A stretch of 64,000 nt of DNA from Auanema rhodensis (Eukaryota > Animalia > Nematoda): contig OZ059898.1 in NCBI GenBank assembly GCA_964057225.1, positions 14,880,001-14,944,000 on the forward strand. The letters are read 5' to 3'. The notes under the pieces were generated by a model. That model was not told the DNA's origin, searched no databases, and saw only the letters and a list, made by a program, of their open reading frames with translations. Every line of letters begins with the position of its first letter. Within the stretch, counting starts at the first letter, position 1. The translations under genes were made by a program, and so were the position numbers. Shown here one piece after another: positions 1 through 32,906 of the stretch.

Positions 1-36
1 TATGGAAATTGAGAAGAGAAGATGCCAAAAGATGGC

Positions 37-9100: not shown

Positions 9101-11768
9101 CCACTAGACCACATGGGACACGTTAACTGTTCTTATGATACTACTTCTTCTATCATTTACCTCGAGGAAGTGAGTAAGCAACAAGGGAAGTAACAACGAT
9201 GAATCGGCCCCGTATTAACTTCTAACAAAACGATTAAATGCAGAAAAGAGATTTAGAAGAGAGCTGAATTCAAAATATGGAAATTCAGAAGAGAAGATGC
9301 CAAAAGATGGCTTCCCATGCCGGGAATCGAACCCGGGCCGCGTGGGTGAAAACCACGAATCCTAACCACTAGACCACATGGGACACGTTAACTGTCTTTA
9401 TGATACTACTTCTTCTATCATTTACCTGAAGGAAGTGAGTAAACAACAAGGAAAGTAACAACGATGAATCGGCCCCGTATTAACTTCTAACAAAACGATT
9501 AAATGCAGAAAAGAGATTTAAAAGAGAGCTGATTTCAAAATATGGAAATTGAGAAGAGAAGATGCCAAAAGATGGCTTCCCATGCCGGGAATCGAACCCG
9601 GGCCGCGTGGGTGAAAACCACGAATCCTAACCACTAGACCACATGGGACACGTTAACTGTTCTTATGATACTACTTCTTCTATCATTTACCTCGAGGAAG
9701 TGAGTAAGCAACAAGGGAAGTAACAACGATGAATCGGCCCCGTATTAACTTCTAACAAAACGATTAAATGCAGAAAAGAAATTTAGAAGAGAGCTGAATT
9801 CAAAATATGGAAATTCAGAAGAGAAGATGCCAAAAGATGGCTTCCCATGCCGGGAATCGAACCCGGGCCGCGTGGGTGAAAACCACGAATCCTAACCACT
9901 AGACCACATGGGACACGTTAACTGTCCTTATGATACTACTTCTTCTATCATTTACCTGAAGGAAGTGAGTAAACAACAAGGAAAGTAACAACGATGAATC
10001 GGCCCCGTATTAACTTCTAACAAAACGATTAAATGCAGAAAAGAGATTTAGAAGAGAGCTGAATTCAAAATATGGAAATTCAGAAGAGAAGATGCCAAAA
10101 GATGGCTTCCCATGCCGGGAATCGAACCCGGGCCGCGTGGGTGAAAACCACGAATCCTAACCACTAGACCACATGGGACACGTTAACTGTCCTTATGATA
10201 CTACTTCTTCTATCATTTACCTGAAGGAAGTGAGTAAACAACAAGGAAAGTAACAACGATGAATCGGCCCCGTATTAACTTCTAACAAAACGATTAAATG
10301 CAGAAAAGAGATTTAAAAGAGAGCTGATTTCAAAATATGGAAATTGAGAAGAGAAGATGCCAAAAGATGGCTTCCCATGCCGGGAATCGAACCCGGGCCG
10401 CGTGGGTGAAAACCACGAATCCTAACCACTAGACCACATGGGACACGTTAACTGTTCTTATGATACTACTTCTTCTATCATTTACCTCGAGGAAGTGAGT
10501 AAGCAACAAGGGAAGTAACAACGATGAATCGGCCCCGTATTAACTTCTAACAAAACGATTAAATGCAGAAAAGAGATTTAGAAGAGAGCTGAATTCAAAA
10601 TATGGAAATTCAGAAGAGAAGATGCCAAAAGATGGCTTCCCATGCCGGGAATCGAACCCGGGCCGCGTGGGTGAAAACCACGAATCCTAACCACTAGACC
10701 ACATGGGACACGTTAACTGTCCTTATGATACTACTTCTTCTATCATTTACCTGAAGGAAGTGAGTAAACAACAAGGAAAGTAACAACGATGAATCGGCCC
10801 CGTATTAACTTCTAACAAAACGATTAAATGCAGAAAAGAGATTAAGAAGAGAGCTGAATTCAAAATATGGAAATTGAGAAGAGAAGATGCCAAAAGATGG
10901 CTTCCCATGCCGGGAATCGAACCCGGGCCGCGTGGGTGAAAACCACGAATCCTAACCACTAGACCACATGGGACACGTTAACTGTTCTTATGATACTACT
11001 TCTTCTATCATTTACCTCGAGGAAGTGAGTAAGCAACAAGGGAAGTAACAACGATGAATCGGCCCCGTATTAACTTCTAACAAAACGATTAAATGCAGAA
11101 AAGAGATTTAGAAGAGAGCTGAATTCAAAATATGGAAATTGAGAAGAGAAGATGCCAAAAGATGGCTTCCCATGCCGGGAATCGAACCCGAGCCGCGTGG
11201 GTGAAAACCACGAATCCTAACCACTAGACCACATGGGACACTTTAACTGTTCTTATGATACTACTTCTTCTATCATTTACCTCAAGGAAGTGAGTAAGCA
11301 ACAAGGGAAGTAACAACGATGAATCGGCCCCGTATTAACTTCTAACAAAACGATTAAAAGCAGAAAAGAGATTTAGAAGAGAGCTGAATTCAAAATATGG
11401 AAATTGAGAAGAGAAGATGCCAAAAGATGGCTTCCCATGCCGGGAATCGAACCCGGGCCGCGTGGGTGAAAACCACGAATCCTAACCACTAGACCACATG
11501 GGACACGTTAACTGTTCTTATGATACTACTTCTTCTATCATTTACCTCGAGGAAGTGAGTAAGCAACAAGGGAAGTAACAACGATGAATCGGCCCCGTAT
11601 TAACTTCTAACAAAACGATTAAATGCAGAAAAGAGATTTAGAAGAGAGCTGAATTCAAAATATGGAAATTGAGAAGAGAAGATGCCAAAAGATGGCTTCC
11701 CATGCCGGGAATCGAACCCGGGCCGCGTGGGTGAAAACCACGAATCCTAACCACTAGACCACATGGGA
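37..11768 (-). tRNA. tRNA-Glu(TTC): 45 tandem tRNA-Glu(TTC) genes at 37+265k..108+265k (k=0-44)
   Basis: Reverse complement TCCCATGTGGTCTAGTGGTTAGGATTCGTGGTTTTCACCCACGCGGCCCGGGTTCGATTCCCGGCATGGGAA. 7-bp acceptor stem, A box, anticodon arm CGTGG-TTTTCAC-CCACG (TTC), B box GGTTCGATTC, T4-T6 run a few nt downstream. Confidence 0.97.
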
Positions 11769-11866
11769 CACTTTAACTGTTCTTATGATACTACTTCTTC
11801 TATCATTTACCTCAAGGAAGTGAGTAAGCAACAAGGGAAGTAACAACGATGAATCGGCCCCGTATT

Positions 11867-12116
11867 TATGGCGTTATACCACAAGTGTATAGTATGGTTG
11901 GAAGTAAAACACAAAGCGAATATGTAAAAAAGGGTTTATTGATGAATTAACAAGACAAGCACGGAATAAAATCACTGACTGCGAACGTTGAAAATGTAAG
12001 ACTGATCTCTTCTCGTGGGCGGTCGTCAGCCTGAAACAAAGAGTTAGTCATGCCACATGTATAACACAACATGTGGTATGGATAAAAATTACTTAGGAAG
12101 TTAGAAGAAAGAAGAA

Positions 12117-12181
<65 letters not shown>

Positions 12182-12245
12182 AGAAACGAATAAAACAATT
12201 GTTGAAGATAAAAAAATTATACAAACTCACTCGCTTATCGCGACA
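11867..12245 (-). repeat. 3' LTR (379 bp) with (GA)29 microsatellite
   Basis: Identical to 21305-21669 except for GA repeat number. Minus-strand AATAAA at 11935-11940; element-sense termini TGTCGCG...CGCCATA. Confidence 0.96.
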
Positions 12246-12256
12246 CTCCCGGCAAT
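12246..12256 (-). other. Polypurine tract (ATTGCCGGGAG|TGT)
   Basis: Short CGGGAG tract abutting the TGT start of the 3' LTR, the form typical of nematode BEL/Pao elements. Confidence 0.75.
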
Positions 12257-12275
12257 GCGGGAATGAGAAGAAGGC

Positions 12276-12782
12276 CTACAAAGGTCTTTTACGTTTTATA
12301 TCTCCACAAACCACTCCATGATGCGTATCCGCCTTACATCTATAGCAGGATACCTCGCATATCGCTGGATGTTTTTGATTCAAACATCTGATGCATAACC
12401 CCAGTTCATGAAGACGGAGAGTGCGTTCCGGTGAGGAAGGATAAATCGGACAGGCCGCAGTACGGTGCCCATCAGCTGTCGGTTTATTGCAGAATACACA
12501 TGAAGCTTTAGGAGCAGTCTGAATGGTCAAATTGTCTAGTTTCAGATTTAACGAATGTTGAATATTGTCCAGTCGTTCGGATAGATGGTTCACCGCGCTA
12601 GCTAGGTGCTCGTAGAGCCTCTTTTCAAGCACAATTAGTTGCCTCAGATTGGCAGCAGTGTTAGGTAGATGGGAATATTTTTTGAGCTCTTCCTCAAAGG
12701 AAGCATTCTCAATTATATTCGAGACAATATCTTCCATTTTCATGGAATATAGGAAAGACATGAGCTGCATCCTTATATACAT
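12276..12782 (-). CDS. Accessory ORF2 of the retroelement: putative coiled-coil plus three Gag-like Cys/His zinc knuckles, basic C-terminus (~168 aa)
   Basis: CVFCNKPTADGHRTAAC, CIRCLNQKHPAIC and CYRCKADTHHGVVC parallel the element's own Gag knuckles; ends KRKRPL. First ATG at 12782; same strand as the polyprotein. Confidence 0.85.
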   Translation of the reverse strand: MYIRMQLMSFLYSMKMEDIVSNIIENASFEEELKKYSHLPNTAANLRQLIVLEKRLYEHLASAVNHLSERLDNIQHSLNLKLDNLTIQTAPKASCVFCNKPTADGHRTAACPIYPSSPERTLRLHELGLCIRCLNQKHPAICEVSCYRCKADTHHGVVCGDIKRKRPL

Positions 12783-13084
12783 GTTCACATCTGGACTTTA
12801 AACGCTGATTATCATCTATTAGTTCATTGTACAATGGTGTGTTTAGGTTATCTTGTTACAGATACAATGAATTTTAGAGCCTGTACAAAAGGTTATGTGT
12901 TATGTAACTGAGTTGGATAAAAGAAACTTGATACTACCATAAATTGAAAAGAAAGAAAAACTATGATATTGTTTTATTACAATGGTTATATTCGTACATA
13001 ATGCTTTCTTTTTCTTTTGTTTCATTATTATTTCAATTTTTAATTTTAAATTTTATCTCCACAAGAAATTCTTCTCTTATGCTT

Positions 13085-14575
13085 TTAAAATCTTTGATCC
13101 AGAAATAAGGCTTTTGATTTTATCCACAGTGTGAATATCCTGGTAGCTATCCATTTTGTGGTTAAGACTGTATTCAAAACTACACAGTACATGATGGGTG
13201 TACATGCCACATATCCTATGGTGGCGGTTATTGCAACGCCTATCAATATGATTCCCAACTTTGATAAAATTAACTTGAAGATTGGGGCAAAGTCAATGGA
13301 TTTGGATTCTGTACCCTTACTTGAGTCACTTTCGTTTATTTCATCTATGCTTGCTATGTGATGTAATATTCCTTTAATAATGATCTTAATTTTTTTATTG
13401 TCGCATGTGGTATAGCATAATTCATCAATCTGAGAATTTTCTCTTTTCATTGTTACTTTTGTGATTGCTACTTTTGGAGAGCATTTTATCATGAAAACTT
13501 CTTTTTGACATTCGATAGAAATCCATGTTTCTTCTGCCGTAAGGCATTGGAATTCTGCGAATGCACCCTGCCCGCAGGAGTAGCAACCTGATAGTTTTGT
13601 CAGGGCAGGTGCGCAAGGCAAATTGTTGGAGAAAATCACTGAGTTTAAGAATAGGGATGAATCGACCGTAACTAAATTTTCGTCTAAATTTGTAGAGAAT
13701 GATAACGTGTTATCTTTAGTTTTAAAGTTTTGGTTAGGAGATGTTATGTCTGATGTATTGGACATTTTTTCAAAAGTAGGGGTATCACACCTACATTTTA
13801 TTTCATCAAATCTATTGAATGTGCAAGGGCAGAATGAGGATACTGTACAGTTATTAAAATGTTTTAATGCGGCTTCCTCTGTTGCACATTGAATTATTCC
13901 CTTTGTGTGTATATCCGTAATGTACGTGTTTTCTTTGGAGGAAAAAAATAATTTTGTGTACATTTCTGGAGGAGGTTGTGATTGTGATAACGTTGTTATA
14001 TTGAAAAGTTGTTCACGATTTTTCGTGTAAGGTTGTAGAGTGATATTGTAATTATTTTTCTGCTGGAGTAATGTTGTTTCTATATTAAATACGGTTTGGG
14101 TGGACCAACTATCACAAGTATAGACTTCGTATACTTCCTCAGTGACGGGTATATGCTCTATTTTGTAGAAAAGGCACGGATCTGTCCAAATCATAGGACA
14201 TGTGTAAAATCTCGCTGACGATGTGAAGCAACCTGATTGTGAAGGGAACGTATATGGTTGTAGTTCCTCGATTTTATTATGAAGCGAGTTAGTTTCACAT
14301 GTTCCGTCACACGAGCCCCGGTGACGGCATCGTAATATGTTCAATATGTTGACGGTTGTCTGTCTAGTGAAGTATCTAGTATTCTTCTGGCAGACATGTT
14401 CAGTATATAGTTTAGTTATTTTAAATTGACCAATTTCATGATTAGAATGCGTTATGGTAATGCATAATTGTTTTGTTCCGGGAGAAAATATGATATCTTG
14501 ACTGTATTCGTGATAACAAGCTAAGTTGTCATCGCATCGTATGTTAACGAAGTGTTGAACGTGAACATCGGAACA
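13085..14575 (-). other. Phlebovirus Gc (G2)-like class II fusion glycoprotein domain (~497 codons)
   Basis: Follows an internal signal peptide (LLAIILALCIGSCSS|CSDV); motifs CRHRGSC and LSGCYSCGQGA; C-terminal TM. Matches the known env type of nematode BEL/Pao elements. Confidence 0.85.
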
Positions 14576-17500
14576 TGAACTGCAGCTTCCAATACATAAA
14601 GCCAAGATGATTGCCAGTAACGATGGTAAAGATGTTTGCGACCCTCTAGTAAAGAGAGAGAATTTTGGTGGCTTTCTCGTATGGTTTAAAATAGGGTAAA
14701 TATGCTTTTGAAAGGTTTCATGATCCACAATATTAGCGTCTTGTGTGTTCGTTTGTTTTAATTGCAACGTATCATTGTGGTCTTCTGTTATTTTTTGATC
14801 AGTTTCATGATCTTCTTGTTCGGAGATTGTTTTATGTTTTAATTTCATGATGTTGAGCATGGTTTGAGTGTTTATGGACCATGTCTTATATCTATATTGG
14901 CTGTAACCCATGCGGCATAGACAAGAGACTATGAGGGTAACGGCCATAATGGTTATTATCACTGTCCATGTTGCCATTTCTGGGGAGCAATGAGGATTCG
15001 CTATAAGTTTTGTGGTGAACATGTTAGAGTCCTTGCAACTATTGATTTCTTCGGCATATGTCGAAGTTATTATAATCGGTAAGGAAAGCGCTTTCATTAT
15101 GTCAGCTGCTACTTTTGGGTTTATTTTATTTTTTCTTTGGTGTGTAGCATAGGACATTTTTAGTGGGAAGGCTTTTATAATTTCCTTCTCAGTGACATCA
15201 TCTTGTTCTGTATATTTTGCTGTTTTTACTGCTGATTGTTTTGTCTTATTTTGAGGTCGATCATTTGTGGCATCCTCATTATTCTCTGTTTCTGGAGTGT
15301 ATGTATTATCATGTTGCGAGTTATCTGATTCATATGCAATATCGTAATTATGGCTAACATCATTTATGTTATTATTCTCATGTATTGTTTGATCTGTATG
15401 TTCTATAGGATGATCGAAAAGTATATTGTCTAATACAATATCAGTATGTGGGGTTCTATCTGTTGAGCTATTATTTTCTTGAACTATGTGTGAGTTGTCT
15501 TCTATGATTTTGTTACTGTTAGTGTTGCATCTTATCTCTAGTGGATAGAGCTGATTAATGGATCGAATAATTATGTTTCCATTGCTTGTTGCGACTTTTG
15601 CTGAACGTATGTTGCCATCTGAACTAGTGATTGTTTCAATGATGCGACCTAGTTTCCATGTTCCTCGTGGCAACATGTCGTTTTGTATCAATACTATTTC
15701 ATCTGGTTGGGGGAAGATGTTTGTGTGATTTTTTCTATGGTGTTTATGCTTAAATATATCTTTTAAGCTTGTTAGATATTCTTCTTGAAATCGTTTCCAA
15801 AATTTAGATGCTGAGTCTTCTGATAATTGAAGCGCTTCTAGCGCTTGCTCTGTTGATTGAATCGTTTGAATATCGCTATGGATATCAAATATATGAGTAT
15901 CCGCGTTGTTTTCAGGTAATGAAAACTTTATGGCTGATGTTAAAAAGTCAATTGGCCTTATGGGTAGAGTATCTAAATTATCTGGGTGTGGATGGGTGAG
16001 TGGGCGTGTATTAATTATAGCTTCTATTTTTACAATGGCTGTGTGTAAGTCATCCAGGGACATTCGACTAGGAATGAAACATTTTTTGAGTGAAGCTTTG
16101 GTTACACCTACTAAACGTTCCCAACATCCACCTTTCCAGGGTGATAATGGAGTGTTGTATATCCATTTAATTTTTTGCTGTGCTAGTGTGTTTAGTAAGC
16201 TTCTTTCGTTGTAATCCGAGGTTTTTTCAAGGGTTTCTAATATTTTTGAGCTCAGAATAAAGTTTCCTGCGCAGTCACTGCGCATAATTTCTGGAGTACC
16301 TCTGCGTGATATAAATCTATTAAATGCATTCATAAAGGCAACTGTGGATTGATTGGTGACTACCTCTAAGTGAATTGCTCTAGTTGTCATGCATGTAAAC
16401 AGACAAATATGGACTTTAGACCCATTTCGAAGGGTGAAGGGGCCCATAAGATCACACCCTGTTGAAAAGAATGCTCTTGTAAGAATCGCTCTATCTTTTG
16501 GTAGCGATGGCATATCTGGTAATTCATAAGGGTGTGATTGAAATCTTTTACATGTCACACAGTTTTTCAATGTTTGTCTGATGACTCCGGTTATTTTTGG
16601 TATGTAGAATTTTTGTCTCAATTGAATAAGCGTGAAATGTTTGCCTTGATGATTATTGTCTTTGTGTATTTTGTTGATCAGTTTTTTAACTATGGGGTTT
16701 GTTTTAAGAAGGAATATAGGGTTTTTCGTCTCTTCGGGAAGAAGAGTATTTTGTAAACGGCTTCTTACGCGATAAATATCCCATGTATCTTTGAAGAATT
16801 TTAGATTTACATGTCTTTGCTGTAAGTCATCAAGGCTCATATTAGATTGACTGTTACTGATCAAAATTTTTTCAATAATGTTGATGTCTTCAACAGTGTG
16901 CGTGTCTGTTGATGTGAGATGTTTTGTTTTTTGCAACTTGTTGGCGTTGTTAGGATGGACTTTAAGAAACCATTTTTTGAATAATTTTCCTACGGTTGTC
17001 ATTGTTTTGATCACATCATCATAGTTTTCACGAATGTTCCAAATATCATCGGTTGGAAGATTGTCTATAATTATGTGGACCACATTGTGATGCTCCGATT
17101 CTGATTCTGCGTTATTCCTGTTAGAGTTCTTAGGCGAGCCGAATGATGTCAGAGGGTTATGAGCGGAAAGTTTAGTTAACCAATGTGGACCCTTTATCCA
17201 GTCGGAATCTTGTAGTTTCTCGATGTCTGCACCTCGGGATCCGATGTCTGCAGTATTGTACGAGGTTTGTACATGATGTAATTCTACATTGCAGCATACT
17301 TGTTTGATTTGGTGTAGCTGTTTATTTATAATGTTTGTTTGATTTTTAATGAACAGTGGGAGGGATTTTAGAGAAATAATCCATGATAGCGCGATGTTGC
17401 TATCGCTTACAATGTTGACTTTTGCCACTTTCGGGCATATGGTTACAATAGCTAATGCCATTCGTACTGCTAAGCGGATGGCTAATAATTCTAATCGAGG

Positions 17501-20500
17501 AATTGTGGTCTTATTTTTGGGTGCTATGCGGGATTTACCGTTGAGCAGAGAACTAATCTGCTCGTTTGTTTGGAAATATGAACATGCGGCCATGGCTTGG
17601 TTGCTTGCGTCAGCAAAGACCCATAACTGTGTTGTATGTTCAGAGAATTTAAAATATCTTCTCATGGTCAATTGCTGATTGTTAATGTGATTAATATGTT
17701 GTTCCCATTGTTTGATATTATCTGATTCAATGGGTTGGTCCCATGATAATTTTGTGTTTATGATTTCTCGCAAGATAAGTTTGAGAGGTAACAGTAATGG
17801 TGCTGCTAATCCAATGGGATCAAATATTGAGTGTAGCTGACTGAGTAGAATTCTCTTGGTGTAACTTGTGTGAGTCGTTGTTATTTTTATTGGGATAATG
17901 AAGGAGTCGTGTTCTTTATTAAAAGATATGCCAAGTATTTTGGTTGTCATGTTCGGATATCTGTCTTCTTCAGGAAGGTTCTGTATTACTTGTTCGTCGT
18001 TTGACAAGAATTCGCGAACATGCATGTTTATTTCTGTGAATAGTTTTTGGGTTTCTTTACATTTCTTTATAGCTTCTGCTGTTGTATTTGCTGTAAGAAT
18101 GATATTGTCAACGTATAAGTTGTTCAGTATTTCCATAGCTAATGGGTTGTCTACTTTTGATTCTAAGAACCATTTTATGCCCATGTTCAATACGCTGGGG
18201 GATGCAGTGATACCGAACGGTAATCTGTTGAATCGAAGGGTTATGATATTGTTGTGAGATATTGGGTATTCTTTGTTTTTTATCCAAAAGAATTTGCATA
18301 GATTTTTGTGATTCTCTGTCAGTTGTATTTGTAAAAATGCGGCTTTGATATCGCATGTTATTAATATTGGTCTTGTTCTGCAGGAGATCATGATGTCGTG
18401 TATATATGTGATAAATGATCGTCCTGTGTGTATTATCTCATTCAACGACGGGCTGTCTTTCTGTTTAGCGGAGGCGTCAAAAACGATTCTGAGAGGGTTA
18501 GCCTTGCTGGGCTTCCAAACCCCATGGTGGGGCATATAAAACTCTAAAGGCTCCTGGTGATTGTTGGGAATTTGTTCGACAATGTTATCTTTGAGGTAAC
18601 TTTCAATGGTTGTAGTATAGTGTGAGAGCATTTCTGGATTGTGCAGTAACTTTCGCCATAGGGATACGAATCTATGGTACGCGGGCATTTTGTTGTTTTT
18701 AAGATTTTTGAAGTTATTTTTTAACGGGAACGGTGCAATAATACGGTTGTTCTCAATTTTTATATCTTTTGAGTATTCTTCATAGTAATCAATAGTGCGG
18801 TCTGCGTTGGCATTTTCTGTATTGATGCCGATAGAATCCAGTTCAAACAGATTAGTGAGGAGTTCTTTATGAGAGGTTTCTTTTGTTATTTCTTCTACTG
18901 TAGAGCATAATATTACTTCTTGTTGTGTATTATCATCGGGAAGAGGAGCTTCTCCATGTATCATGTGGCCGAATACCGAATTTTTCAATCTCATACGTGA
19001 GGGGAGTTCGGTTTCTTCGTTTAAATGCATGAACAGTTTGTATCTATCCATACCTATCAGTATATCCGGAGTAAATGATTCTCCGTTTGTTTGTGGATTG
19101 GCTAATTTTATTTTTCTTGTCTTTATAAATTTCAAGTCTTCTTTAGATAGTTTTGGACAACGTATGGGTGTGGTTAACATGGGTTTGGTGAATAGTTTTG
19201 TTACGATAAGGGATCCACTTGAGGTTCCAATAATTACCTTTACGTCCTGAACTTCGTGCGTTTCGGACAATGCTCCGATACCGTAAAAGGTTTTCTTTTG
19301 AGAACCAAGGATGGGCAATCCTAACTTAGTGGATAAGTCCTTGGATATAAAAGATCTCATGGATCCTTCATCTATGAGCATGCGTACTTGCTCATATTTT
19401 TTACTATTGTGGTTGTATATGTTTGCCATTGCTGTTCGTAATATTACTTGACTTTCTTCAATATTATGGGTGTCGGCAATGTGATTAAGCGATACTGGTG
19501 CATTAAGTGCCTCAGTAGGGATTCGATTATTAGTGTCAGAGTCTTGTTTATATTCTGTTGTTTTTTTATTCAATAATTCTTCTGTGGTGATCAGTAAAGC
19601 CTGATCTTTTTTAATTGTGGGAGTTTCTTTATCTTTTTGGATATTTTGTACACTTTTTCTTCCTTGTGAGCACAAGGCGGAATTATGATCTCCTTGGCAA
19701 TTGCGACATTTTTGTTTTCTGCATTCCGAACTTTTGTGTTTATCGGAAAAGCAAATCCAACAGATGGCCTTTCCGCGAATGCGGTACCTTCTTTTCTCTG
19801 GTGTTTCAAATGTGGTGCATTGATAAAAACGATGCTCGGATGAGTCGCAAAAGACACATGGCCAAGTTTGGGTTTTCCGTTGTTCTGCAGTGCTGTCTTT
19901 ATGTGAAACAGATGTGACATTGTCTTTGTGATTTCGAAACTTTTGTTCATGACTATTTCTTGTTTGTTCTTTTAGAATAAACGAATAGATTTTATGGTCT
20001 ACAGCTGCCAGCATTTCTTTAGTAGAATGGTAGTTGTTTGGATGAATTAGAATGTCTTCCACGATGTGGTATGGGAATTTGTTGAGAATCATCGCGGTAC
20101 ACATTTCGCGGGATACTGTAGCTCCGGCTGCTTCAATTTGCCTGATAAGTGCCTTGGTTTCTCCAAATGTTTCTTTGCATGCTTTTGCATTATTGCTTGC
20201 AAATCTCAAATTACGTAGTTGTGTTAAAAGAGAGTTGATATCCGACGAATAGTCTCCAAATTCAGAAACTAATGCTTCACGCATGAGCTCATAATTTTGA
20301 GCAGAGGGTTCTATTCCTCTGATTGCTATTTGTGAATTGCCTTTGAGGCTTTCACAGAGTAGGTTTACCTTTTCTAAGGTTGTAAACTGTTCATTATCAT
20401 GAACAAGTCTATCAAAACGGCCCCAGAATGATTTGAAGTTCTCTGGTTTGCCATCAAATGTAGGTAGCGACATCGCTGGTTTTTGGATGCTAGTTTGTTG

Positions 20501-21016
20501 GATGTGTAGGAATGACTTGATAATTTCCAGAAATTGATCATTCGATTTGTTTTCTGTTTCATTGTTTTCTGTTGAGCAATTGCTGTTGTGCTCAGATTCA
20601 TTCTTATGAAGCGTTTTTCTCAGCTTTCTAAGTATGCGTTCGGCTTTCATGATGTGTTCGTCAAGCTCAATAATGGCGTTTTGAACCTTTTTAATGTTGG
20701 GTTCAAAGTCTTCATCGGATGTGAAGGCGATGTACTGTTCGTCTAATGCTTTACGAAGCGTTTTGTCTGATGCTTCGTAAAATTTTTGGAATTTTTTCTC
20801 GTTATCTTGATGATTTTTTAACGATTCTTTGAATTGGTGTTGGACTTTTGTCCAGCGAATGATAAGGCAAGAGAGGGTTTCCTCTTCTTCCTCAGTGTGG
20901 AAGTCGCAATCTACCAGAATACCAGGAAGGTCCTTCACTTCCATCTCGTATCGTGTAAGCAGTTCTCCAAGAAACTGGTTAGATTGTTTGATATGATTGA
21001 CAAAAAGGAGTGACAT
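13085..21016 (-). CDS. Gag-protease-RT-RNaseH-integrase-envelope polyprotein (2643 aa)
   Basis: Gag LPTFDG..FWGRF and three CCHC knuckles; protease LIDEGS; RT LRIVFDAS/CDIKAAF/RLPFG/YVDN; RNaseH FADAS, TIPRLEL; integrase HHCC plus CDLMGP/SDCAGNF/WERL; Cys-rich glycoprotein with a C-terminal TM. Confidence 0.97.
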   Translation of the reverse strand: MSLLFVNHIKQSNQFLGELLTRYEMEVKDLPGILVDCDFHTEEEEETLSCLIIRWTKVQHQFKESLKNHQDNEKKFQKFYEASDKTLRKALDEQYIAFTSDEDFEPNIKKVQNAIIELDEHIMKAERILRKLRKTLHKNESEHNSNCSTENNETENKSNDQFLEIIKSFLHIQQTSIQKPAMSLPTFDGKPENFKSFWGRFDRLVHDNEQFTTLEKVNLLCESLKGNSQIAIRGIEPSAQNYELMREALVSEFGDYSSDINSLLTQLRNLRFASNNAKACKETFGETKALIRQIEAAGATVSREMCTAMILNKFPYHIVEDILIHPNNYHSTKEMLAAVDHKIYSFILKEQTRNSHEQKFRNHKDNVTSVSHKDSTAEQRKTQTWPCVFCDSSEHRFYQCTTFETPEKRRYRIRGKAICWICFSDKHKSSECRKQKCRNCQGDHNSALCSQGRKSVQNIQKDKETPTIKKDQALLITTEELLNKKTTEYKQDSDTNNRIPTEALNAPVSLNHIADTHNIEESQVILRTAMANIYNHNSKKYEQVRMLIDEGSMRSFISKDLSTKLGLPILGSQKKTFYGIGALSETHEVQDVKVIIGTSSGSLIVTKLFTKPMLTTPIRCPKLSKEDLKFIKTRKIKLANPQTNGESFTPDILIGMDRYKLFMHLNEETELPSRMRLKNSVFGHMIHGEAPLPDDNTQQEVILCSTVEEITKETSHKELLTNLFELDSIGINTENANADRTIDYYEEYSKDIKIENNRIIAPFPLKNNFKNLKNNKMPAYHRFVSLWRKLLHNPEMLSHYTTTIESYLKDNIVEQIPNNHQEPLEFYMPHHGVWKPSKANPLRIVFDASAKQKDSPSLNEIIHTGRSFITYIHDIMISCRTRPILITCDIKAAFLQIQLTENHKNLCKFFWIKNKEYPISHNNIITLRFNRLPFGITASPSVLNMGIKWFLESKVDNPLAMEILNNLYVDNIILTANTTAEAIKKCKETQKLFTEINMHVREFLSNDEQVIQNLPEEDRYPNMTTKILGISFNKEHDSFIIPIKITTTHTSYTKRILLSQLHSIFDPIGLAAPLLLPLKLILREIINTKLSWDQPIESDNIKQWEQHINHINNQQLTMRRYFKFSEHTTQLWVFADASNQAMAACSYFQTNEQISSLLNGKSRIAPKNKTTIPRLELLAIRLAVRMALAIVTICPKVAKVNIVSDSNIALSWIISLKSLPLFIKNQTNIINKQLHQIKQVCCNVELHHVQTSYNTADIGSRGADIEKLQDSDWIKGPHWLTKLSAHNPLTSFGSPKNSNRNNAESESEHHNVVHIIIDNLPTDDIWNIRENYDDVIKTMTTVGKLFKKWFLKVHPNNANKLQKTKHLTSTDTHTVEDINIIEKILISNSQSNMSLDDLQQRHVNLKFFKDTWDIYRVRSRLQNTLLPEETKNPIFLLKTNPIVKKLINKIHKDNNHQGKHFTLIQLRQKFYIPKITGVIRQTLKNCVTCKRFQSHPYELPDMPSLPKDRAILTRAFFSTGCDLMGPFTLRNGSKVHICLFTCMTTRAIHLEVVTNQSTVAFMNAFNRFISRRGTPEIMRSDCAGNFILSSKILETLEKTSDYNERSLLNTLAQQKIKWIYNTPLSPWKGGCWERLVGVTKASLKKCFIPSRMSLDDLHTAIVKIEAIINTRPLTHPHPDNLDTLPIRPIDFLTSAIKFSLPENNADTHIFDIHSDIQTIQSTEQALEALQLSEDSASKFWKRFQEEYLTSLKDIFKHKHHRKNHTNIFPQPDEIVLIQNDMLPRGTWKLGRIIETITSSDGNIRSAKVATSNGNIIIRSINQLYPLEIRCNTNSNKIIEDNSHIVQENNSSTDRTPHTDIVLDNILFDHPIEHTDQTIHENNNINDVSHNYDIAYESDNSQHDNTYTPETENNEDATNDRPQNKTKQSAVKTAKYTEQDDVTEKEIIKAFPLKMSYATHQRKNKINPKVAADIMKALSLPIIITSTYAEEINSCKDSNMFTTKLIANPHCSPEMATWTVIITIMAVTLIVSCLCRMGYSQYRYKTWSINTQTMLNIMKLKHKTISEQEDHETDQKITEDHNDTLQLKQTNTQDANIVDHETFQKHIYPILNHTRKPPKFSLFTRGSQTSLPSLLAIILALCIGSCSSCSDVHVQHFVNIRCDDNLACYHEYSQDIIFSPGTKQLCITITHSNHEIGQFKITKLYTEHVCQKNTRYFTRQTTVNILNILRCRHRGSCDGTCETNSLHNKIEELQPYTFPSQSGCFTSSARFYTCPMIWTDPCLFYKIEHIPVTEEVYEVYTCDSWSTQTVFNIETTLLQQKNNYNITLQPYTKNREQLFNITTLSQSQPPPEMYTKLFFSSKENTYITDIHTKGIIQCATEEAALKHFNNCTVSSFCPCTFNRFDEIKCRCDTPTFEKMSNTSDITSPNQNFKTKDNTLSFSTNLDENLVTVDSSLFLNSVIFSNNLPCAPALTKLSGCYSCGQGAFAEFQCLTAEETWISIECQKEVFMIKCSPKVAITKVTMKRENSQIDELCYTTCDNKKIKIIIKGILHHIASIDEINESDSSKGTESKSIDFAPIFKLILSKLGIILIGVAITATIGYVACTPIMYCVVLNTVLTTKWIATRIFTLWIKSKALFLDQRF

Positions 21017-21289
21017 TTTTGTTGTAGATGTAGGAATAATGCTTATATTCCTTTTTTGTTTTCTTTTTTCTTTGTTTGTTTGGTGATCACAGTATATGTG
21101 AACGTAAGGAAATTCAAACCTCTGTTTCTAATTTCAGAGTTTGCTTATTGTTCAAGTCTGTTTGGTGTGACTTGACGTGGACTTATGATCGCCACGATTT
21201 TTATTAAGTATGTTTTTTGCTCAAACACGCTTGGTTCGAGTTGTATCTCACCTGCCACGCGGGACTTAAAGCGGCTAAGATCTAAACTA

Positions 21290-21301
21290 GCCGATGCACC
21301 A
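21290..21301 (-). promoter_or_regulatory. Primer-binding site TGGTGCATCGGC, complementary to the 3' end of tRNA-Gly(GCC)
   Basis: Lies 3 nt inside the 5' LTR; + strand reads GCCGATGCACCA, the tRNA-Gly(GCC) 3' end including CCA (consensus from memory). Confidence 0.88.
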
Positions 21302-21304
21302 ATT

Positions 21305-21554
21305 TATGGCGTTATACCACAAGTGTATAGTATGGTTGGAAGTAAAACACAAAGCGAATATGTAAAAAAGGGTTTATTGATGAATTAACAAGACAAGCAC
21401 GGAATAAAATCACTGACTGCGAACGTTGAAAATGTAAGACTGATCTCTTCTCGTGGGCGGTCGTCAGCCTGAAACAAAGAGTTAGTCATGCCACATGTAT
21501 AACACAACATGTGGTATGGATAAAAATTACTTAGGAAGTTAGAAGAAAGAAGAA

Positions 21555-21605
<51 letters not shown>

Positions 21606-21669
21606 AGAAACGAATAAAACAATTGTTGAAGATAAAAAAATTATACAAACTCACTCGCTTATCGCGACA
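21305..21669 (-). repeat. 5' LTR (365 bp) with (GA)22 microsatellite
   Basis: Direct repeat of 11867-12245; adjacent to the PBS. Confidence 0.96.
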
Positions 21670-24600
21670 GTATTAACTTCTAACAAAACGATTAAATGCA
21701 GAAAAGAGATTTAGAAGAGAGCTGAATTCAAAATATGGAAATTCAGAAGAGAAGATGCCAAAAAATGGCTTCCCATGCCGGGAATCGAACCCGGGCCGCG
21801 TGGGTGAAAACCACGAATCCTAACCACTAGACCACATGGGACACGTTAACTGTTCTTATGATACTACTTCTTCTATCATTTACCTCGAGGAAGTGAGTAA
21901 GCAACAAGGGAAGTAACAACGATGAATCGGCCCCGTATTAACTTCTAACAAAACGATTAAATGCAGAAAAGAGATTTAGAAGAGAGCTGAATTCAAAATA
22001 TGGAAATTCAGAAGAGAAGATGCCAAAAGATGGCTTCCCATGCCGGGAATCGAACCCGGGCCGCGTGGGTGAAAACCACGAATCCTAACCACTAGACCAC
22101 ATGGGACACTTTAACTGTTCTTATGATACTACTTCTTCTATCATTTACCTCAAGGAAGTGAGTAAGCAACAAGGGAAGTAACAACGATGAATCGGCCCCG
22201 TATTAACTTCTAACAAAACGATTAAAAGCAGAAAAGAGATTTAGAAGAGAGTTGATTTCAAAATATGGAAATTCAGAAGAGAAGATGCCAAAAGATGGCT
22301 TCCCATGCCGGGAATCGAACCCGGGCCGCGTGGGTGAAAACCACGAATCCTAACCACTAGACCACATTGGACACGTTAACTGTTCTTATGATACTACTTC
22401 TTCTATCATTTATCTCGAGGAAGTGAGTAAGCAACAAGGGAAGTAACAACGACGAATCGGCCCCGTATTAACTTCTAACAAAACGATTAAAAGCAGAAAA
22501 GAGATTTAGAAGAGAGTTGATTTCAAAATATGGAAATTCAGAAGAGAAGATGCCAAAAGATGGCTTCCCATGCCGGGAATCGAACCCGGGCCGCGTGGGT
22601 GAAAACCACGAATCCTAACCACTAGACCACATGGGACACGTTAACTGTTCTTATGATACTACTTCTTCTATCATTTACCTCGAGGAAGTGAGTAAGCAAC
22701 AAGGGAAGTAACAACGATGAATCGGCCCCGTATTAACTTCTAACAAAAAGATTAAATGCAGAAAAGAGATTTAGAAGAGAGCTGAATTCAAAATATGGAA
22801 ATTGAGAAGAGAAGATGCCAAAAGATGGCTTCCCATGCCGGGAATCGAACCCGGGCCGCGTGGGTGAAAACCACGAATCCTAACCACTAGACCACATGGG
22901 ACACGTTAACTGTTCTTATGATACTACTTCTTCTATCATTTACCTCGAGGAAGTGAGTAAGCAACAAGGGAAGTAACAACGATGAATCGGCCCCGTATTA
23001 ACTTCTAACAAAAAGATTAAATGCAGAAAAGAGATTTAGAAGAGAGCTGAATTCAAAATATGGAAATTGAGAAGAGAAGATGCCAAAAGATGGCTTCCCA
23101 TGCCGGGAATCGAACCCGGGCCGCGTGGGTGAAAACCACGAATCCTAACCACTAGACCACATGGGACACGTTAACTGTTCTTATGATACTACTTCTTCTA
23201 TCATTTACCTCGAGGAAGTGAGTAAGCAACAAGGGAAGTAACAACGATGAATCGGCCCCGTATTAACTTCTAACAAAACGATTAAATGCAGAAAAGAGAT
23301 TTAGAAGAGAGCTGAATTCAAAATATGGAAATTGAGAAGAGAAGATGCCAAAAGATGGCTTCCCATGCCGGGAATCGAACCCGGGCCGCGTGGGTGAAAA
23401 CCACGAATCCTAACCACTAGACCACATGGGACACTTTAACTGTTCTTATGATACTACTTCTTCTATCATTTACCTCAAGGAAGTGAGTAAGCAACAAGGG
23501 AAGTAACAACGATGAATCGGCCCCGTAATAACTTCTAACAAAACGATTAAAAGCAGAAAAGAGATTTAGAAGAGAGCTGAATTCAAAATATGGAAATTCA
23601 GAAGAGAAGATGCCAAAAAATGGCTTCCCATGCCGGGAATCGAACCCGGGCCGCGTGGGTGAAAACCACGAATCCTAACCACTAGACCACATGGGACACG
23701 TTAACTGTTCTTATGATACTACTTCTTCTATCATTTATCTCGAGGAAGTGAGTAAGCAACAAGGGAAGTAACAACGATGAATCGGCCCCGTATTAACTTC
23801 TAACAAAACGATTAAAAGCAGAAAAGAGATTTAGAAGAGAGTTGATTTCAAAATATGGAAATTGAGAAGAGAAGATGCCAAAAGATGGCTTCCCATGCCG
23901 GGAATCGAACCCGGGCCGCGTGGGTGAAAACCACGAATCCTAACCACTAGACCACATGGGACACGTTAACTGTTCTTATGATACTACTTCTTCTATCATT
24001 TACCTCGAGGAAGTGAGTAAGCAACAAGGGAAGTAACAACGATGAATCGGCCCCGTATTAACTTCTAACAAAAAGATTAAATGCAGAAAAGAGATTTAGA
24101 AGAGAGCTGAATTCAAAATATGGAAATTGAGAAGAGAAGATGCCAAAAGATGGCTTCCCATGGCGGGAATCGAACCCGGGCCGCGTGGGTGAAAACCACG
24201 AATCCTAACCACTAGACCACATGGGACACTTTAACTGTTCTTATGATACTACTTCTTCTATCATTTACCTCAAGGAAGTGAGTAAGCAACAAGGGAAGTA
24301 ACAACGATGAATCGGCCCCGTATTAACTTCTAACAAAACGATTAAAAGCAGAAAAGAGATTTAGAAGAGAGCTGAATTCAAAATATGGAAATTCAGAAGA
24401 GAAGATGCCAAAAAATGGCTTCCCATGCCGGGAATCGAACCCGGGCCGCGTGGGTGAAAACCACGAATCCTAACCACTAGACCACATGGGACACGTTAAC
24501 TGTTCTTATGATACTACTTCTTCTATCATTTACCTCGAGGAAGTGAGTAAGCAACAAGGGAAGTAACAACGATGAATCGGCCCCGTATTAACTTCTAACA

Positions 24601-27600: not shown

Positions 27601-29560
27601 TCCCATGCCGGGAATCGAACCCGGGCCGCGTGGGTGAAAACCACGAATCCTAACCACTAGACCACATGGGACACGTTAACTGTTCTTATGATACTACTTC
27701 TTCTATCATTTACCTCGAGGAAGTGAGTAAGCAACAAGGGAAGTAACAACGATGAATCGGCCCCGTATTAACTTCTAACAAAACGATTAAATGCAGAAAA
27801 GAGATTTAGAAGAGAGCTGAATTCAAAATATGGAAATTCAGAAGAGAAGATGCCAAAAGATGGCTTCCCATGGCGGGAATCGAACCCGGGCCGCGTGGGT
27901 GAAAACCACGAATCCTAACCACTAGACCACATGGGACACGTTAACTGTCCTTATGATACTACTTCTTCTATCATTTACCTGAAGGAAGTGAGTAAACAAC
28001 AAGGAAAGTAACAACGATGAATCGGCCCCGTATTAACTTCTAACAAAACGATTAAATGCAGAAAAGAGATTTAGAAGAGAGCTGAATTCAAAATATGGAA
28101 ATTCAGAAGAGAAGATGCCAAAAGATGGCTTCCCATGCCGGGAATCGAACCCGGGCCGCGTGGGTGAAAACCACGAATCCTAACCACTAGACCACATGGG
28201 ACACGTTAACTGTTCTTATGATACTACTTCTTCTATCATTTACCTCGAGGAAGTGAGTAAGCAACAAGGGAAGTAACAACGATGAATCGGCCCCGTATTA
28301 ACTTCTAACAAAACGATTAAATGCAGAAAAGAGATTTAGAAGAGAGCTGAATTCAAAATATGGAAATTCAGAAGAGAAGATGCCAAAAGATGGCTTCCCA
28401 TGCCGGGAATCGAACCCGGGCCGCGTGGGTGAAAACCACGAATCCTAACCACTAGACCACATGGGACACGTTAACTGTCCTTATGATACTACTTCTTCTA
28501 TCATTTACCTGAAGGAAGTGAGTAAACAACAAGGAAAGTAACAACGATGAATCGGCCCCGTATTAACTTCTAACAAAACGATTAAATGCAGAAAAGAGAT
28601 TTAGAAGAGAGCTGAATTCAAAATATGGAAATTCAGAAGAGAAGATGCCAAAAGATGGCTTCCCATGCCGGGAATCGAACCCGGGCCGCGTGGGTGAAAA
28701 CCACGAATCCTAACCACTAGACCACATGGGACACGTTAACTGTCCTTATGATACTACTTCTTCTATCATTTACCTGAAGGAAGTGAGTAAACAACAAGGA
28801 AAGTAACAACGATGAATCGGCCCCGTATTAACTTCTAACAAAACGATTAAATGCAGAAAAGAGATTTAGAAGAGAGCTGAATTCAAAATATGGAAATTGA
28901 GAAGAGAAGATGCCAAAAGATGGCTTCCCATGCCGGGAATCGAACCCGGGCCGCGTGGGTGAAAACCACGAATCCTAACCACTAGACCACATGGGACACT
29001 TTAACTGTTCTTATGATACTACTTCTTCTATCATTTACCTCAAGGAAGTGAGTAAGCAACAAGGGAAGTAACAACGATGAATCGGCCCCGTATTAACTTC
29101 TAACAAAACGATTAAAAGCAGAAAAGAGATTTAGAAGAGAGCTGAATTCAAAATATGGAAATTCAGAAGAGAAGATGCCAAAAAATGGCTTCCCATGCCG
29201 GGAATCGAACCCGGGCCGCGTGGGTGAAAACCACGAATCCTAACCACTAGACCACATGGGACACGTTAACTGTTCTTATGATACTACTTCTTCTATCATT
29301 TATCTCGAGGAAGTGAGTAAGCAACAAGGGAAGTAACAACGATGAATCGGCCCCGTATTAACTTCTAACAAAACGATTAAAAGCAGAAAAGAGATTTAGA
29401 AGAGAGCTGAATTCAAAATATGAAAATTCAAAAGAGAAGATGCCAAAAGATGGCTTCCCATGCCGGGAATCGAACCCGGGCCGCGTGGGTGAAAACCACG
29501 AATCCTAACCACTAGACCACATGGGACACGTTAACTGTCCTTATGATACTACTTCTTCTA
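21670..29560 (-). repeat. 265-bp tandem array, right arm (30 tRNA-bearing units)
   Basis: Unit starts at 21734+265j up to 29419; similarity ends abruptly at ~29560. Confidence 0.99.
21770..29526 (-). tRNA. tRNA-Glu(TTC): 30 tandem tRNA-Glu(TTC) genes at 21770+265j..21841+265j (j=0-29)
   Basis: Same 72-nt gene as in the left arm; last copy at 29455-29526. Confidence 0.97.
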
Positions 29561-32436: not shown

Positions 32437-32641
32437 TATACGAATAAATATTAAATAGCTTTTTTTTGTTTCTTAGCTAAGCAAACTCCTCGTTTCTTTG
32501 TCTGAAATATAAAATTTTGCTTTCTTTTGGCTTCTTCTCTCCTGCATTTTATCATCTTAGATTTCTGCTTCTGCAACTCTGTGTTGTTCAATCAGACAAA
32601 ATGTTGATAGAAGGAATAGTGTAAGATGGTCAGCTAACGTG

Positions 32642-32713
32642 TCCCATGTGGTCTAGTGGTTAGGATTCGTGGTTTTCACCCACGCGGCCCGGGTTCGATT
32701 CCCGGCATGGGAA
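32642..32713 (+). tRNA. tRNA-Glu(TTC): tRNA-Glu(TTC)
   Basis: Perfect consensus copy, followed by GCCATCTTTT. Confidence 0.96.
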
Positions 32714-32906
32714 GCCATCTTTTGGCATCTTCTCTTCTGAATTTCCATATTTTGAAATCAACTCTCTTCTAAATCTCTTTTCTCCTTTTAATCTTTTTGT
32801 TAGAAGTTAATACGGGGCCGATTCATCGTTGTTACTTCCCTTGTTGCTTACTCACTTCCTCGAGGTAAATGATAGAAGAAGTAGTATCATAAGAACAGTT
32901 AAAGTG

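What the first reader, a model, noticed from the sequence alone, without database searches (positions are those of the whole stretch)
11862..21674. Very young, intact enveloped belpaovirus (candidate active nematode endogenous virus)
Seen: LTRs identical apart from microsatellite length, perfect 5-bp TSD, uninterrupted 2643-aa ORF with catalytic motifs, intact second ORF, PBS and PPT. Known: some nematode BEL/Pao elements carry phlebovirus-like glycoproteins. Inference: currently mobile and possibly able to form enveloped particles.
Basis: partly seen in the sequence, partly recalled or inferred. Interest (0 to 1): 0.8.

Follow-up and report, generated by a model that had tools for sequence, protein, structure and literature searches.

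The report
Intact Atlas-like nematode endogenous virus
This is a complete, very recently inserted copy of a known kind of nematode retrovirus-like element that carries a phlebovirus-type fusion protein; it is an ordinary member of that kind except that it lacks most of the companion envelope protein and has an extra small gene.

Summary
A 9,803-bp LTR element lies on the minus strand at 11867-21669. It has a 5-bp target duplication, and neighbouring copies of the host repeat show the empty site. The LTRs (379 and 365 bp) have no substitutions and differ only by seven AG units. One uninterrupted 2,643-aa ORF encodes Gag, protease, RT, RNase H, integrase and a phlebovirus Gc-like fusion protein. 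All conserved catalytic residues are kept.

This architecture is already described for Atlas virus and other nematode belpaoviruses. The best solved-structure match is Atlas Gc, and the RT is sister to a Necator americanus element. Identity to any relative is at most 36%.

Three corrections or additions:
- The envelope gene is fused into the large ORF. The "second ORF" (170 aa) is a helical protein with three zinc knuckles, like a Gag nucleocapsid. It has small relatives in Auanema and strongylid nematodes.
- The Gn-like ectodomain found in relatives (about 300-480 aa, cysteine-rich) is almost absent here (about 28 aa).
- The insertion sits in a spacer of an array of 75 tRNA-Glu genes.

Recent insertion is well supported. 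Current mobility and enveloped particles are untested, and the missing Gn ectodomain weakens the second claim.

The parts
11862..11866 (.). Target-site duplication, left copy (GTATT)
   Evidence: the same 5 nt occur once in each intact neighbouring satellite unit.
11867..12245 (-). 3' LTR (379 bp); contains the (AG)n microsatellite at 12120-12178
   Evidence: identical to the other LTR except for 14 bp of microsatellite.
12246..12250 (-). Short purine run abutting the 3' LTR (weak polypurine tract)
   Evidence: 5-nt purine run; only 8 purines in the last 15 nt.
12276..12788 (-). ORF2, 170 aa (first ATG at residue 3): N-terminal helices plus three Cys/His knuckles at residues 97-161
12789..13084 (-). 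A+T-rich spacer between the polyprotein stop and ORF2; it contains several ATGs
13085..21016 (-). Single Gag-Pol-Env ORF, 2643 aa, no stops or frameshifts
20063..20458 (-). Gag capsid-like domain (DUF1759, residues 187-318); residues 1-186 upstream have no detectable relatives
19670..19858 (-). Gag nucleocapsid, three zinc knuckles (residues 387-449)
19226..19390 (-). Aspartic protease core (residues 543-597; conserved Asp 549)
18017..18409 (-). Reverse transcriptase (RVT_1, residues 870-1000; YVDN at 968)
   Evidence: motif as quoted in PMC9094657.
16697..17860 (-). Peptidase_A17 family match and RNase H region (residues 1053-1440)
15539..16690 (-). Integrase: H2C2 zinc domain, rve core, DUF5641 (residues 1443-1826)
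14576..15526 (-). Linker and Gn stub (residues 1831-2147). Order: acidic/polar low-complexity stretch, weak hydrophobic stretch 1973-1983, about 28 aa with 2 Cys, TM 2012-2039, 87-aa Cys-free tail, signal-like 2127-2151
13088..14575 (-). Gc-like class II fusion protein (residues 2148-2643): Phlebovirus_G2 and G2_C domains, 28 Cys, C-terminal TM 2574-2618
21290..21301 (-). Primer-binding-site-like motif beginning TGG, 3 nt after the 5' LTR
21305..21669 (-). 5' LTR (365 bp); (AG)n at 21558-21602; TATA-like and poly(A)-signal-like strings present
21670..21674 (.). Target-site duplication, right copy (GTATT)
11697..11768 (-). Host tRNA-Glu(TTC) gene; its 5' end is 98 nt from the insertion
21770..21841 (-). 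Host tRNA-Glu(TTC) gene; its 3' end is 100 nt from the insertion

Best explanation
A full-length, recently integrated provirus of an Atlas-like belpaovirus (a BEL/Pao LTR retroelement with a phlebovirus-derived envelope), in what is most likely a rhabditine nematode.

Shown:
- Two LTRs without substitutions, a clean insertion with a target duplication, and one open 2643-aa Gag-PR-RT-RNase H-IN-Env frame with all conserved catalytic residues.
- A Gc-type class II fusion module whose closest solved relative is Atlas Gc.
- An RT that is sister to a Necator element, inside a clade of env-bearing nematode elements.

Inferred mechanism:
- Transcription starts in the 5' LTR.
- The leader has no ATG, so one polyprotein is translated.
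- The protease cuts Gag and Pol.
- The envelope part enters the ER through its internal hydrophobic segments. This yields a membrane stub (TM plus an 87-aa tail, laid out like a phenuivirus Gn anchor and tail but with almost no ectodomain) and a signal-led Gc anchored by its C-terminal TM.
- Reverse transcription is primed by a tRNA at the TGG motif, and integration produces the 5-bp duplication.
- ORF2, a helical protein with three nucleocapsid-type knuckles, is most likely an accessory nucleic-acid-binding protein made from a separate (spliced or trans-spliced) mRNA.

With identical LTRs the copy is young enough that its intactness needs no selection. It shows recent retrotransposition by the lineage, not that this copy or its envelope is active.
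For: - LTR identity and microsatellite difference.
- Empty-site paralogues and exact array phase.
- ORF and Pfam domains (DUF1759, Peptidase_A17, Integrase_H2C2, DUF5641, Phlebovirus_G2 at 2.3e-41, Phlebo_G2_C; RVT_1 and rve on pieces).
- Conserved catalytic residues.
- YVDN and three Gag knuckles, both named as belpaovirus hallmarks in the two Atlas papers.
- Best PDB hit is 7a4a (Atlas Gc), E 1.3e-20 over residues 18-418 of Gc, followed by bandavirus and phlebovirus Gc chains.
- Relatives are nematode polyproteins (Necator, Haemonchus, C. brenneri).
- RT tree places it sister to Necator in 100 of 100 bootstraps.
- The TM-tail-signal-Gc-TM layout is shared with relatives P0004-P0006.
- ORF2 homology to nucleocapsids and to a full-length 182-aa Auanema protein. 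Model pLDDT 76.
Against: - Only one copy was seen. There is no other copy or solo LTR in the 64 kb, and nothing above 36% identity in the protein collection, so there is no sign yet of a family of young copies.
- The PPT is weak and the LTR ends TG...TA rather than TG...CA.
- The PBS tRNA is unassigned.
- The Gn-like ectodomain is nearly absent.
- The Gc structure prediction failed (pLDDT 38.9), so the class II fold rests on sequence homology alone.
- Expression of ORF2 is unsupported: several ATGs lie upstream of it and its base composition differs from ORF1.
- The host is not identified.
Confidence: 0.88

Rival explanations
1. The element is an intracellular retrotransposon only. The lineage moves within the germline without leaving cells, and the envelope module is a decaying passenger. 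The Gn ectodomain is already lost, and Gc is intact merely because the copy is young.
For: The linker between integrase and Gc is 317 aa, against 508, 635 and 1417 aa in relatives. Only about 28 aa with 2 Cys lie where relatives have 309-479 aa with 10-23 Cys. PMC9094657 notes that env is not needed for intracellular spread and is often the first part lost. Identical LTRs mean the open frame need not reflect selection.
Against: Gc keeps 28 Cys, both Pfam Gc domains, its leading signal-like segment and its C-terminal anchor. The Gn-type TM and Cys-free tail are also retained in the same layout as relatives. That pattern looks like a tidy domain-level absence rather than random decay. Atlas Gc alone showed fusion activity in PMC9094657.
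Confidence: 0.35
2. The insertion is old and its LTRs are kept identical by gene conversion or array homogenisation, so the copy is not evidence of recent activity.
For: It lies in a tandem array whose units are kept 97-100% alike by concerted evolution. That shows recombination is active in this region.
Against: A 7.9-kb frame with no stop and with every conserved catalytic residue would not survive long without selection. The LTRs still differ in microsatellite length, which conversion would tend to erase. Unequal exchange in an array would tend to remove a 9.8-kb interruption (inference).
Confidence: 0.07
3. Part of the element is co-opted by the host, for example Gc as a cell-cell fusogen or ORF2 as a host RNA-binding gene.
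For: ORF2-like small proteins are annotated as separate genes in several nematodes. ORF2 composition differs from the rest of the element. The Atlas authors raise co-option for Gc.
Against: ORF2 and Gc lie between two identical LTRs with a fresh target duplication, so this locus is a new insertion rather than an old fixed gene. Several of the small relatives are named as Gag or protease fragments and may be pieces of elements.
Confidence: 0.05
4. Assembly artefact: an element misjoined into a repeat array.
For: Long, nearly identical tandem arrays are hard to assemble (general knowledge).
Against: Both junctions are base-exact, with a duplication of the target and preserved array phase. A misjoin would not produce this.
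Confidence: 0.02

Closest known systems
Atlas virus of Ancylostoma ceylanicum and the 'Atlas clade' of nematode belpaoviruses (PMC9094657; bioRxiv 10.64898/2026.03.22.711591)
   Same: - LTR element of about 9-10 kb with identical LTRs.
- One Gag-Pol-Env polyprotein without stops or introns.
- YVDN in the RT and three zinc knuckles in Gag.
- C-terminal phlebovirus Gc-like class II fusion protein of about 500 aa with a single C-terminal anchor.
- Atlas Gc (7a4a) is the best solved-structure match.
   Different: - 2643 aa against 2828 aa; LTRs of 365/379 bp against 271 bp.
- Atlas has a 421-aa Gn-like region, while this element has only a stub.
- Atlas is described with a single ORF, while this element has a further 170-aa ORF before the 3' LTR.
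- The Gc match is distant (77 bits).
- Gag found no PDB match, and residues 1-186 have no relatives.
Necator americanus RB195_023306 (P0001), C. brenneri CAEBREN_32653 (P0006) and unnamed env-bearing polyproteins P0004 and P0005
   Same: They form the same RT clade, with Necator as sister at 100/100. They share Peptidase_A17, RVT_1, integrase and Phlebovirus_G2 domains, and the same TM-tail-signal-Gc layout.
   Different: RT identity is 45% to Necator, overall identity is at most 36%, and Gc identity is 20-24%. They have long Cys-rich ectodomains ahead of Gc. None has an ORF2-like part after Gc.
Gn-Gc glycoprotein precursors of Phenuiviridae
   Same: Gc homology (Pfam PF07245 and PF19019; PDB Gc chains of bandaviruses and phleboviruses at E 4e-10 to 2e-7). 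The order anchor, tail, internal signal, Gc, anchor is the same (the phenuivirus layout is as summarised).
   Different: There is no Gn ectodomain, and the module is the tail of a retroelement polyprotein rather than a product of an RNA-virus segment.
CERV of the C. elegans element Cer1 (PMC10309623)
   Same: A small accessory protein encoded at the 3' side of a nematode LTR element, with helical/coiled-coil parts and a Cys-rich putative RNA-binding part, made from a spliced mRNA. This is an analogy of role and position only.
   Different: Cer1 belongs to a different family of elements. CERV is 517 aa and shares exons with gag. No homology was tested here, because its sequence was not fetched.
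tRNA-gene-associated LTR elements such as Ty1/Ty3 of yeast and DGLT-A of Dictyostelium (recalled from general knowledge, not tested)
   Same: The insertion lies in a spacer between Pol III-transcribed tRNA genes and disrupts none of them.
   Different: A single insertion about 100 nt from either gene gives no evidence of targeting. The array fills nearly half of the window, so a chance hit is likely.

Membership tests
Belpaoviridae (BEL/Pao LTR retroelements) | LTRs flanking gag-pol in the order PR-RT-RNase H-IN | tested here: met
   LTRs are present; domain order is DUF1759, protease, RVT_1, Peptidase_A17/RNase H, integrase, DUF5641.
Belpaoviridae (BEL/Pao LTR retroelements) | RT groups with BEL/Pao elements | tested here: met
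   All 39 relatives carry the BEL/Pao Pfam set. The NJ tree of 36 RTs places it inside a nematode BEL/Pao clade. No outgroup families were included, so this is placement among BEL/Pao rather than a test against other families.
Belpaoviridae (BEL/Pao LTR retroelements) | Three CCHC-type knuckles in the Gag nucleocapsid (hallmark named in the 2026 preprint) | tested here: met
   knuckles at 387-400, 419-432 and 437-449; for the criterion.
Nematode belpaoviruses with atypical Env (Merchant et al. 2022) | YVDN in place of the usual RT polymerase-site motif | tested here: met
   YVDN at residue 968; for the criterion.
Nematode belpaoviruses with atypical Env (Merchant et al. 2022) | Single Gag-Pol-Env polyprotein with a phlebovirus Gc-like C-terminus | tested here: met
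Nematode belpaoviruses with atypical Env (Merchant et al. 2022) | Gn-like region ahead of Gc (421 aa in Atlas) | tested here: not met
   no family, relative or PDB match for residues 1831-2147; about 28 aa with 2 Cys where relatives have 309-479 aa. Only the anchor, tail and Gc signal are kept.
Atlas clade as defined in bioRxiv 10.64898/2026.03.22.711591 | More than 70% coverage of the Atlas polyprotein, and more than 50% identity with more than 70% coverage to the Atlas CA core | not tested
   Indirect evidence: Gc matches Atlas Gc only distantly (77 bits), and the capsid-like domain is 24-32% identical to the relatives it hits. The CA criterion is therefore probably not met.
Phenuivirus-type class II fusion protein (Gc) | Three-domain class II fold with a fusion loop and many disulfides | tested here: inconclusive
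   Sequence homology covers Atlas Gc residues 21-434, and there are 28 Cys against the 30 implied for Atlas. The AlphaFold model had pLDDT 38.9, so no fold comparison was made.
Active or recently active LTR element | Identical LTRs, intact target duplication, open frames | tested here: met
Active or recently active LTR element | Insertion polymorphism, transcripts, further young copies | not testable with these tools
   Only this window is at hand. There is no second copy in it, and DNA of related proviruses was not fetched.

The most novel reading that the evidence does not exclude
This element represents a separate lineage of nematode belpaoviruses with two fixed differences from Atlas. First, the envelope has been reduced to a Gn membrane stub plus Gc, a class II fusogen that works without a companion ectodomain. 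Second, a conserved 3' accessory gene (helical region plus three nucleocapsid-type knuckles) has been added. The small homologues of that gene in Auanema, hookworms and trichostrongyles would be the same accessory gene of related elements, possibly serving genomic-RNA handling in the way CERV does for Cer1.
Probability: 0.25. Interest if true: 0.6.

Novelty: new variant of a known kind. Interest (0 to 1): 0.45.

Why it matters
Atlas-type elements are the clearest case of a retrotransposon that captured a fusion protein from an RNA virus. A new, divergent and fully open copy widens the set that can be compared.

Two points go beyond another family member. A Gc kept without a Gn ectodomain bears on whether class II fusogens in these elements need a companion protein. 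An extra nucleocapsid-like gene with relatives across rhabditine nematodes suggests an unrecognised accessory function in this group.

The position inside a large tRNA-Glu gene array is a convenient, precisely datable insertion for population surveys. If the copy turns out to be a lone insertion with a vestigial envelope, it remains a well-annotated but ordinary young retrotransposon.

Tried and rejected
- Word search with the envelope part alone (684 aa) found nothing. It sees only proteins of 376-1197 aa that share exact words, so it says little.
- Word search with ORF2 found nothing. The exhaustive search then found 63 relatives.
- AlphaFold of Gc with a 4-row alignment gave pLDDT 38.9. The model was discarded and no fold search was run on it.
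- Foldseek of the ORF2 model against the PDB gave nothing below E = 3.
- PDB sequence searches with Gag, with the linker/Gn stub and with ORF2 gave no meaningful match.
- Pfam on the linker, on residues 1-186 and on ORF2 found nothing.
- blastn and tblastn of the element against the rest of the window found no other copy, solo LTR or fragment.
- PBS against the flanking tRNA-Glu gave 4 nt of complementarity, so that tRNA is not the primer.
- Rfam on the element found only the two flanking tRNAs.
- Host identification failed. The family scans give no organism.
- Two literature searches, on tRNA-array targeting in nematodes and on belpaovirus primer tRNAs, gave nothing usable.
- Rejected idea: that ORF2 is the env. 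Rejected idea: that the 5-bp duplication is a chance match; the empty-site paralogues settle it.


Full report
**What is there**

The window's first 29.5 kb is a tandem array of a 265-bp unit. Each unit carries a tRNA-Glu(TTC) gene on the minus strand: 75 genes, with units 97-100% alike. The array is interrupted once, by the element of the finding.

Direct-repeat search and a base-by-base comparison give two LTRs, 11867-12245 (379 bp) and 21305-21669 (365 bp). They have no substitutions. The only difference is the length of an (AG)n run, 29.5 against 22.5 units.

GTATT flanks the element on both sides (11862-11866 and 21670-21674). Eight intact neighbouring units show that string once in the same context, so the empty site is visible in the window itself. 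In-register satellite copies on either side are 10073 nt apart. That equals 265 + 9803 + 5, so the insertion added exactly the element plus the duplication and removed nothing.

One caveat applies to the duplication. The three bases between the 5' LTR and the primer site equal the first three bases of the duplication. Formally the duplication can therefore be read as 2 to 5 bp, and 5 bp is the usual reading. In the sense orientation the LTR begins TG and ends TA rather than CA.

**Coding content**

The element is on the minus strand. A single frame, 13085-21016, is open for 2643 codons from an ATG, and the 288-nt leader holds no other ATG. Pfam places the following domains along the polyprotein:

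| Domain | Residues | E-value |
|---|---|---|
| DUF1759 (Gag capsid region) | 187-318 | 5.9e-15 |
| Aspartic protease | 543-597 | 7.3e-4 (piece scan, below Pfam's cut-off) |
| RVT_1 | 870-1000 | 2.5e-9 (piece scan) |
| Peptidase_A17 | 1053-1206 | 7.3e-40 |
| Integrase_H2C2 | 1443-1494 | 1.7e-9 |
| rve | 1530-1625 | 2.2e-5 (piece scan, below Pfam's cut-off) |
| DUF5641 | 1730-1826 | 1.1e-16 |
| Phlebovirus_G2 | 2148-2437 | 2.3e-41 |
| Phlebo_G2_C | 2468-2617 | 9.6e-6 |

- **Conserved residues.** I aligned each enzyme domain with up to 39 relatives and looked at columns at least 90% conserved among them. The element keeps 3 of 4 such columns in the protease, 17 of 19 in RT, 17 of 19 in RNase H and 29 of 29 in integrase.
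- **Catalytic residues.** Those kept include the protease Asp, the RT Asp residues, two RNase H Asp residues, and the integrase His-His-Cys-Cys and Asp-Asp-Glu.
- **Breaks.** The polyprotein has no stops and no frameshifts. ORF2 has none either.
- **Hallmarks.** The RT carries YVDN at residue 968 and Gag has three zinc knuckles. The two Atlas papers name both as hallmarks of nematode belpaoviruses.

**The envelope part**

The envelope is not a second ORF. It is the C-terminal fifth of the polyprotein.

- **Gc homology.** The Gc-like part (residues 2148-2643) finds Atlas virus Gc (PDB 7a4a) as its best solved relative. The E-value is 1.3e-20, aligned over residues 18-418 against 21-434 of the chain. 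Bandavirus and phlebovirus Gc chains follow.
- **Gc features.** It has 28 cysteines, a signal-like hydrophobic segment directly ahead of it (2127-2151) and a C-terminal anchor (2574-2618).
- **Upstream region in relatives.** Relatives P0005, P0006 and P0004 have, ahead of Gc, a cysteine-rich stretch of 309-479 aa with 10-23 Cys. This is followed by a membrane segment, a cysteine-free tail of 51-92 aa, and the Gc signal.
- **Upstream region here.** This element keeps the membrane segment (2012-2039), an 87-aa cysteine-free tail and the signal. Only about 28 aa with 2 Cys lie between a weak hydrophobic stretch (1973-1983) and the membrane segment. The rest of the 317-aa linker is acidic and polar low-complexity sequence.
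- **No Gn signal.** No family, relative or PDB match was found for this linker.
- **Reading.** I read this as a Gn anchor and tail without a Gn ectodomain. The topology is inferred from hydropathy alone.
- **Fold not checked.** A structure prediction of Gc from a four-row alignment was too poor to use (pLDDT 38.9). The class II fold is therefore inferred from homology, not modelled.

**ORF2**

ORF2 lies between the polyprotein stop and the 3' LTR, at 12276-12788. It is 170 aa under table 11 and 168 aa from the first ATG. The chance of such an open frame, given the local base composition, is about 7e-6.

- **Knuckle half.** The C-terminal half is homologous to the three-knuckle nucleocapsid. 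It is 28% identical to the element's own NC and up to 41% identical to NCs of other BEL/Pao elements.
- **Relatives.** The word search was blank, so I used the single exhaustive search on ORF2. It found 63 proteins at E up to 0.001, and most are 110-260 aa. The best is a 182-aa protein of Auanema sp. JU1783. It aligns at 35% identity from near the N-terminus to near the C-terminus of both proteins.
- **Distribution.** Other named relatives come from Ostertagia, Nippostrongylus, three Ancylostoma species, Haemonchus and Cylicocyclus. Some carry Gag or protease domain names and may be fragments of elements.
- **Conservation.** All eleven invariant columns in a nine-sequence alignment are the knuckle Cys/His residues plus one Pro and one Leu.
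- **Model.** The predicted structure (pLDDT 76) has helices at 3-38 and 45-91 followed by the knuckles. It has no significant fold match in the PDB.
- **Composition and expression.** ORF2 is less A-rich than ORF1. Several ATGs lie upstream of it, so a separate message would be needed.
- **Function.** An accessory nucleic-acid-binding role is my inference. CERV of Cer1 is an analogy only.

**Relatives and placement**

- **Identity to relatives.** Full-length relatives are at most 36% identical: Necator americanus (a truncated 1530-aa model) 36%, Haemonchus contortus 30%, C. brenneri 27%.
- **No near-identical protein.** The search returned no near-identical protein.
- **RT tree.** A neighbour-joining tree of one contiguous RT stretch (36 sequences, 344 columns) puts the element sister to the Necator protein in 100 of 100 bootstraps. 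It lies inside a group with the other env-bearing nematode proteins and next to Haemonchus; insect and arachnid elements lie outside.
- **Gc identity.** Gc is 20-24% identical to the three relatives that have a full Gc.
- **Host.** A nematode host, probably a rhabditine, is inferred from these relatives and from the ORF2 family. The species was not identified.

**Comparison with the known**

Merchant et al. 2022 describe Atlas virus as follows: 9204 nt, identical 271-nt LTRs, one 2828-aa Gag-Pol-Env polyprotein, a 421-aa Gn-like region and a 498-aa Gc. It is one of nine such elements in A. ceylanicum, and some are transcribed. A 2026 preprint defines an 11-member Atlas clade by coverage and by more than 50% identity in the capsid core.

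The present element has the same overall design, so the kind is known. It differs in sequence (a distant lineage), in the missing Gn ectodomain and in the extra ORF. I could not test the clade's capsid criterion. The indirect evidence suggests the criterion is not met.

**Age**

There are no differences in 365 aligned LTR positions. The microsatellite difference may have arisen during reverse transcription or later by slippage. From general knowledge of nematode mutation rates (a few per billion sites per generation), zero changes puts the insertion within roughly a million generations. This is an inference, not a tool result.

**What is and is not shown**

- **Shown:** anatomy, intactness, youth, family placement, Gc homology, absence of a Gn-sized ectodomain, and the ORF2 family.
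- **Inferred:** replication cycle, membrane topology, ORF2 role and host clade.
- **Not shown:** transcription, current mobility, particles, or any preference for tRNA arrays (one insertion only).

- That rules out look-up of encoding contigs, the search for related loci, collection scans and the accessions printed in the papers. As a result, copy number outside the window, the genomic context of ORF2 relatives and the host's name remain open.

- I stopped, used them in no tool, and assign no primer tRNA.
Their hits are reported only as "-like".
- Searches were slips of size, frame or format. Three of them (32, 43, 62) were corrected and re-sent to the same tool. For one search the search was re-run with different terms.

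Noticed in passing
window 1-11866 and 21670-29560; also 32605-33339: A tandem array of 75 tRNA-Glu(TTC) genes in 265-bp units, all on the minus strand and 97-100% alike. A short inverted array of three further copies (87% unit identity) lies 3 kb beyond its end. This is an unusually large single-isoacceptor tRNA array.
   Followed up: partly
window 11867 / 21669 relative to tRNA genes at 11697-11768 and 21770-21841: The element sits mid-spacer, 98 nt from the 5' end of one tRNA gene and 100 nt from the 3' end of the next, in the same orientation as the tRNA genes. It disrupts none of them. One insertion cannot show targeting.
   Followed up: partly
window 36264-36365 (+): A full-length U6 spliceosomal RNA gene (Rfam 110 bits, E 4.5e-28) lies in an A+T-rich stretch beyond the arrays.
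   Followed up: no
window 63315-63626 (+); 54281-54523 (+); 57810-59156 (+): Host gene exons: a ubiquitin C-terminal hydrolase exon (Pfam UCH, 3e-14), a weak AAA_11 helicase-like exon, and several short Cys-rich exons separated by short gaps.
   Followed up: partly
window 12279-12788 against 13088-21016 (sense strand): ORF2 has a different base composition from the polyprotein frame (A 0.30 and G 0.21, against A 0.385 and G 0.15). This hints at a separate origin or history.
   Followed up: no
window 21302-21304 and 11864-11866: The three bases between the 5' LTR and the primer site repeat the first three bases of the target duplication, so LTR identity runs 3 nt further than the 5-bp reading allows. 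The LTR ends TG...TA rather than TG...CA.
   Followed up: partly
window 21262-21301 (sense strand): The sequence just after the TGG-initial primer motif looks, by eye, as if it could form a short hairpin overlapping the end of the motif. It was not folded.
   Followed up: no
window 37233-37315 and 43754-43835: Long dinucleotide microsatellites, (CT)41 and (GA)41, of the same kind as the run inside the LTRs.
   Followed up: no
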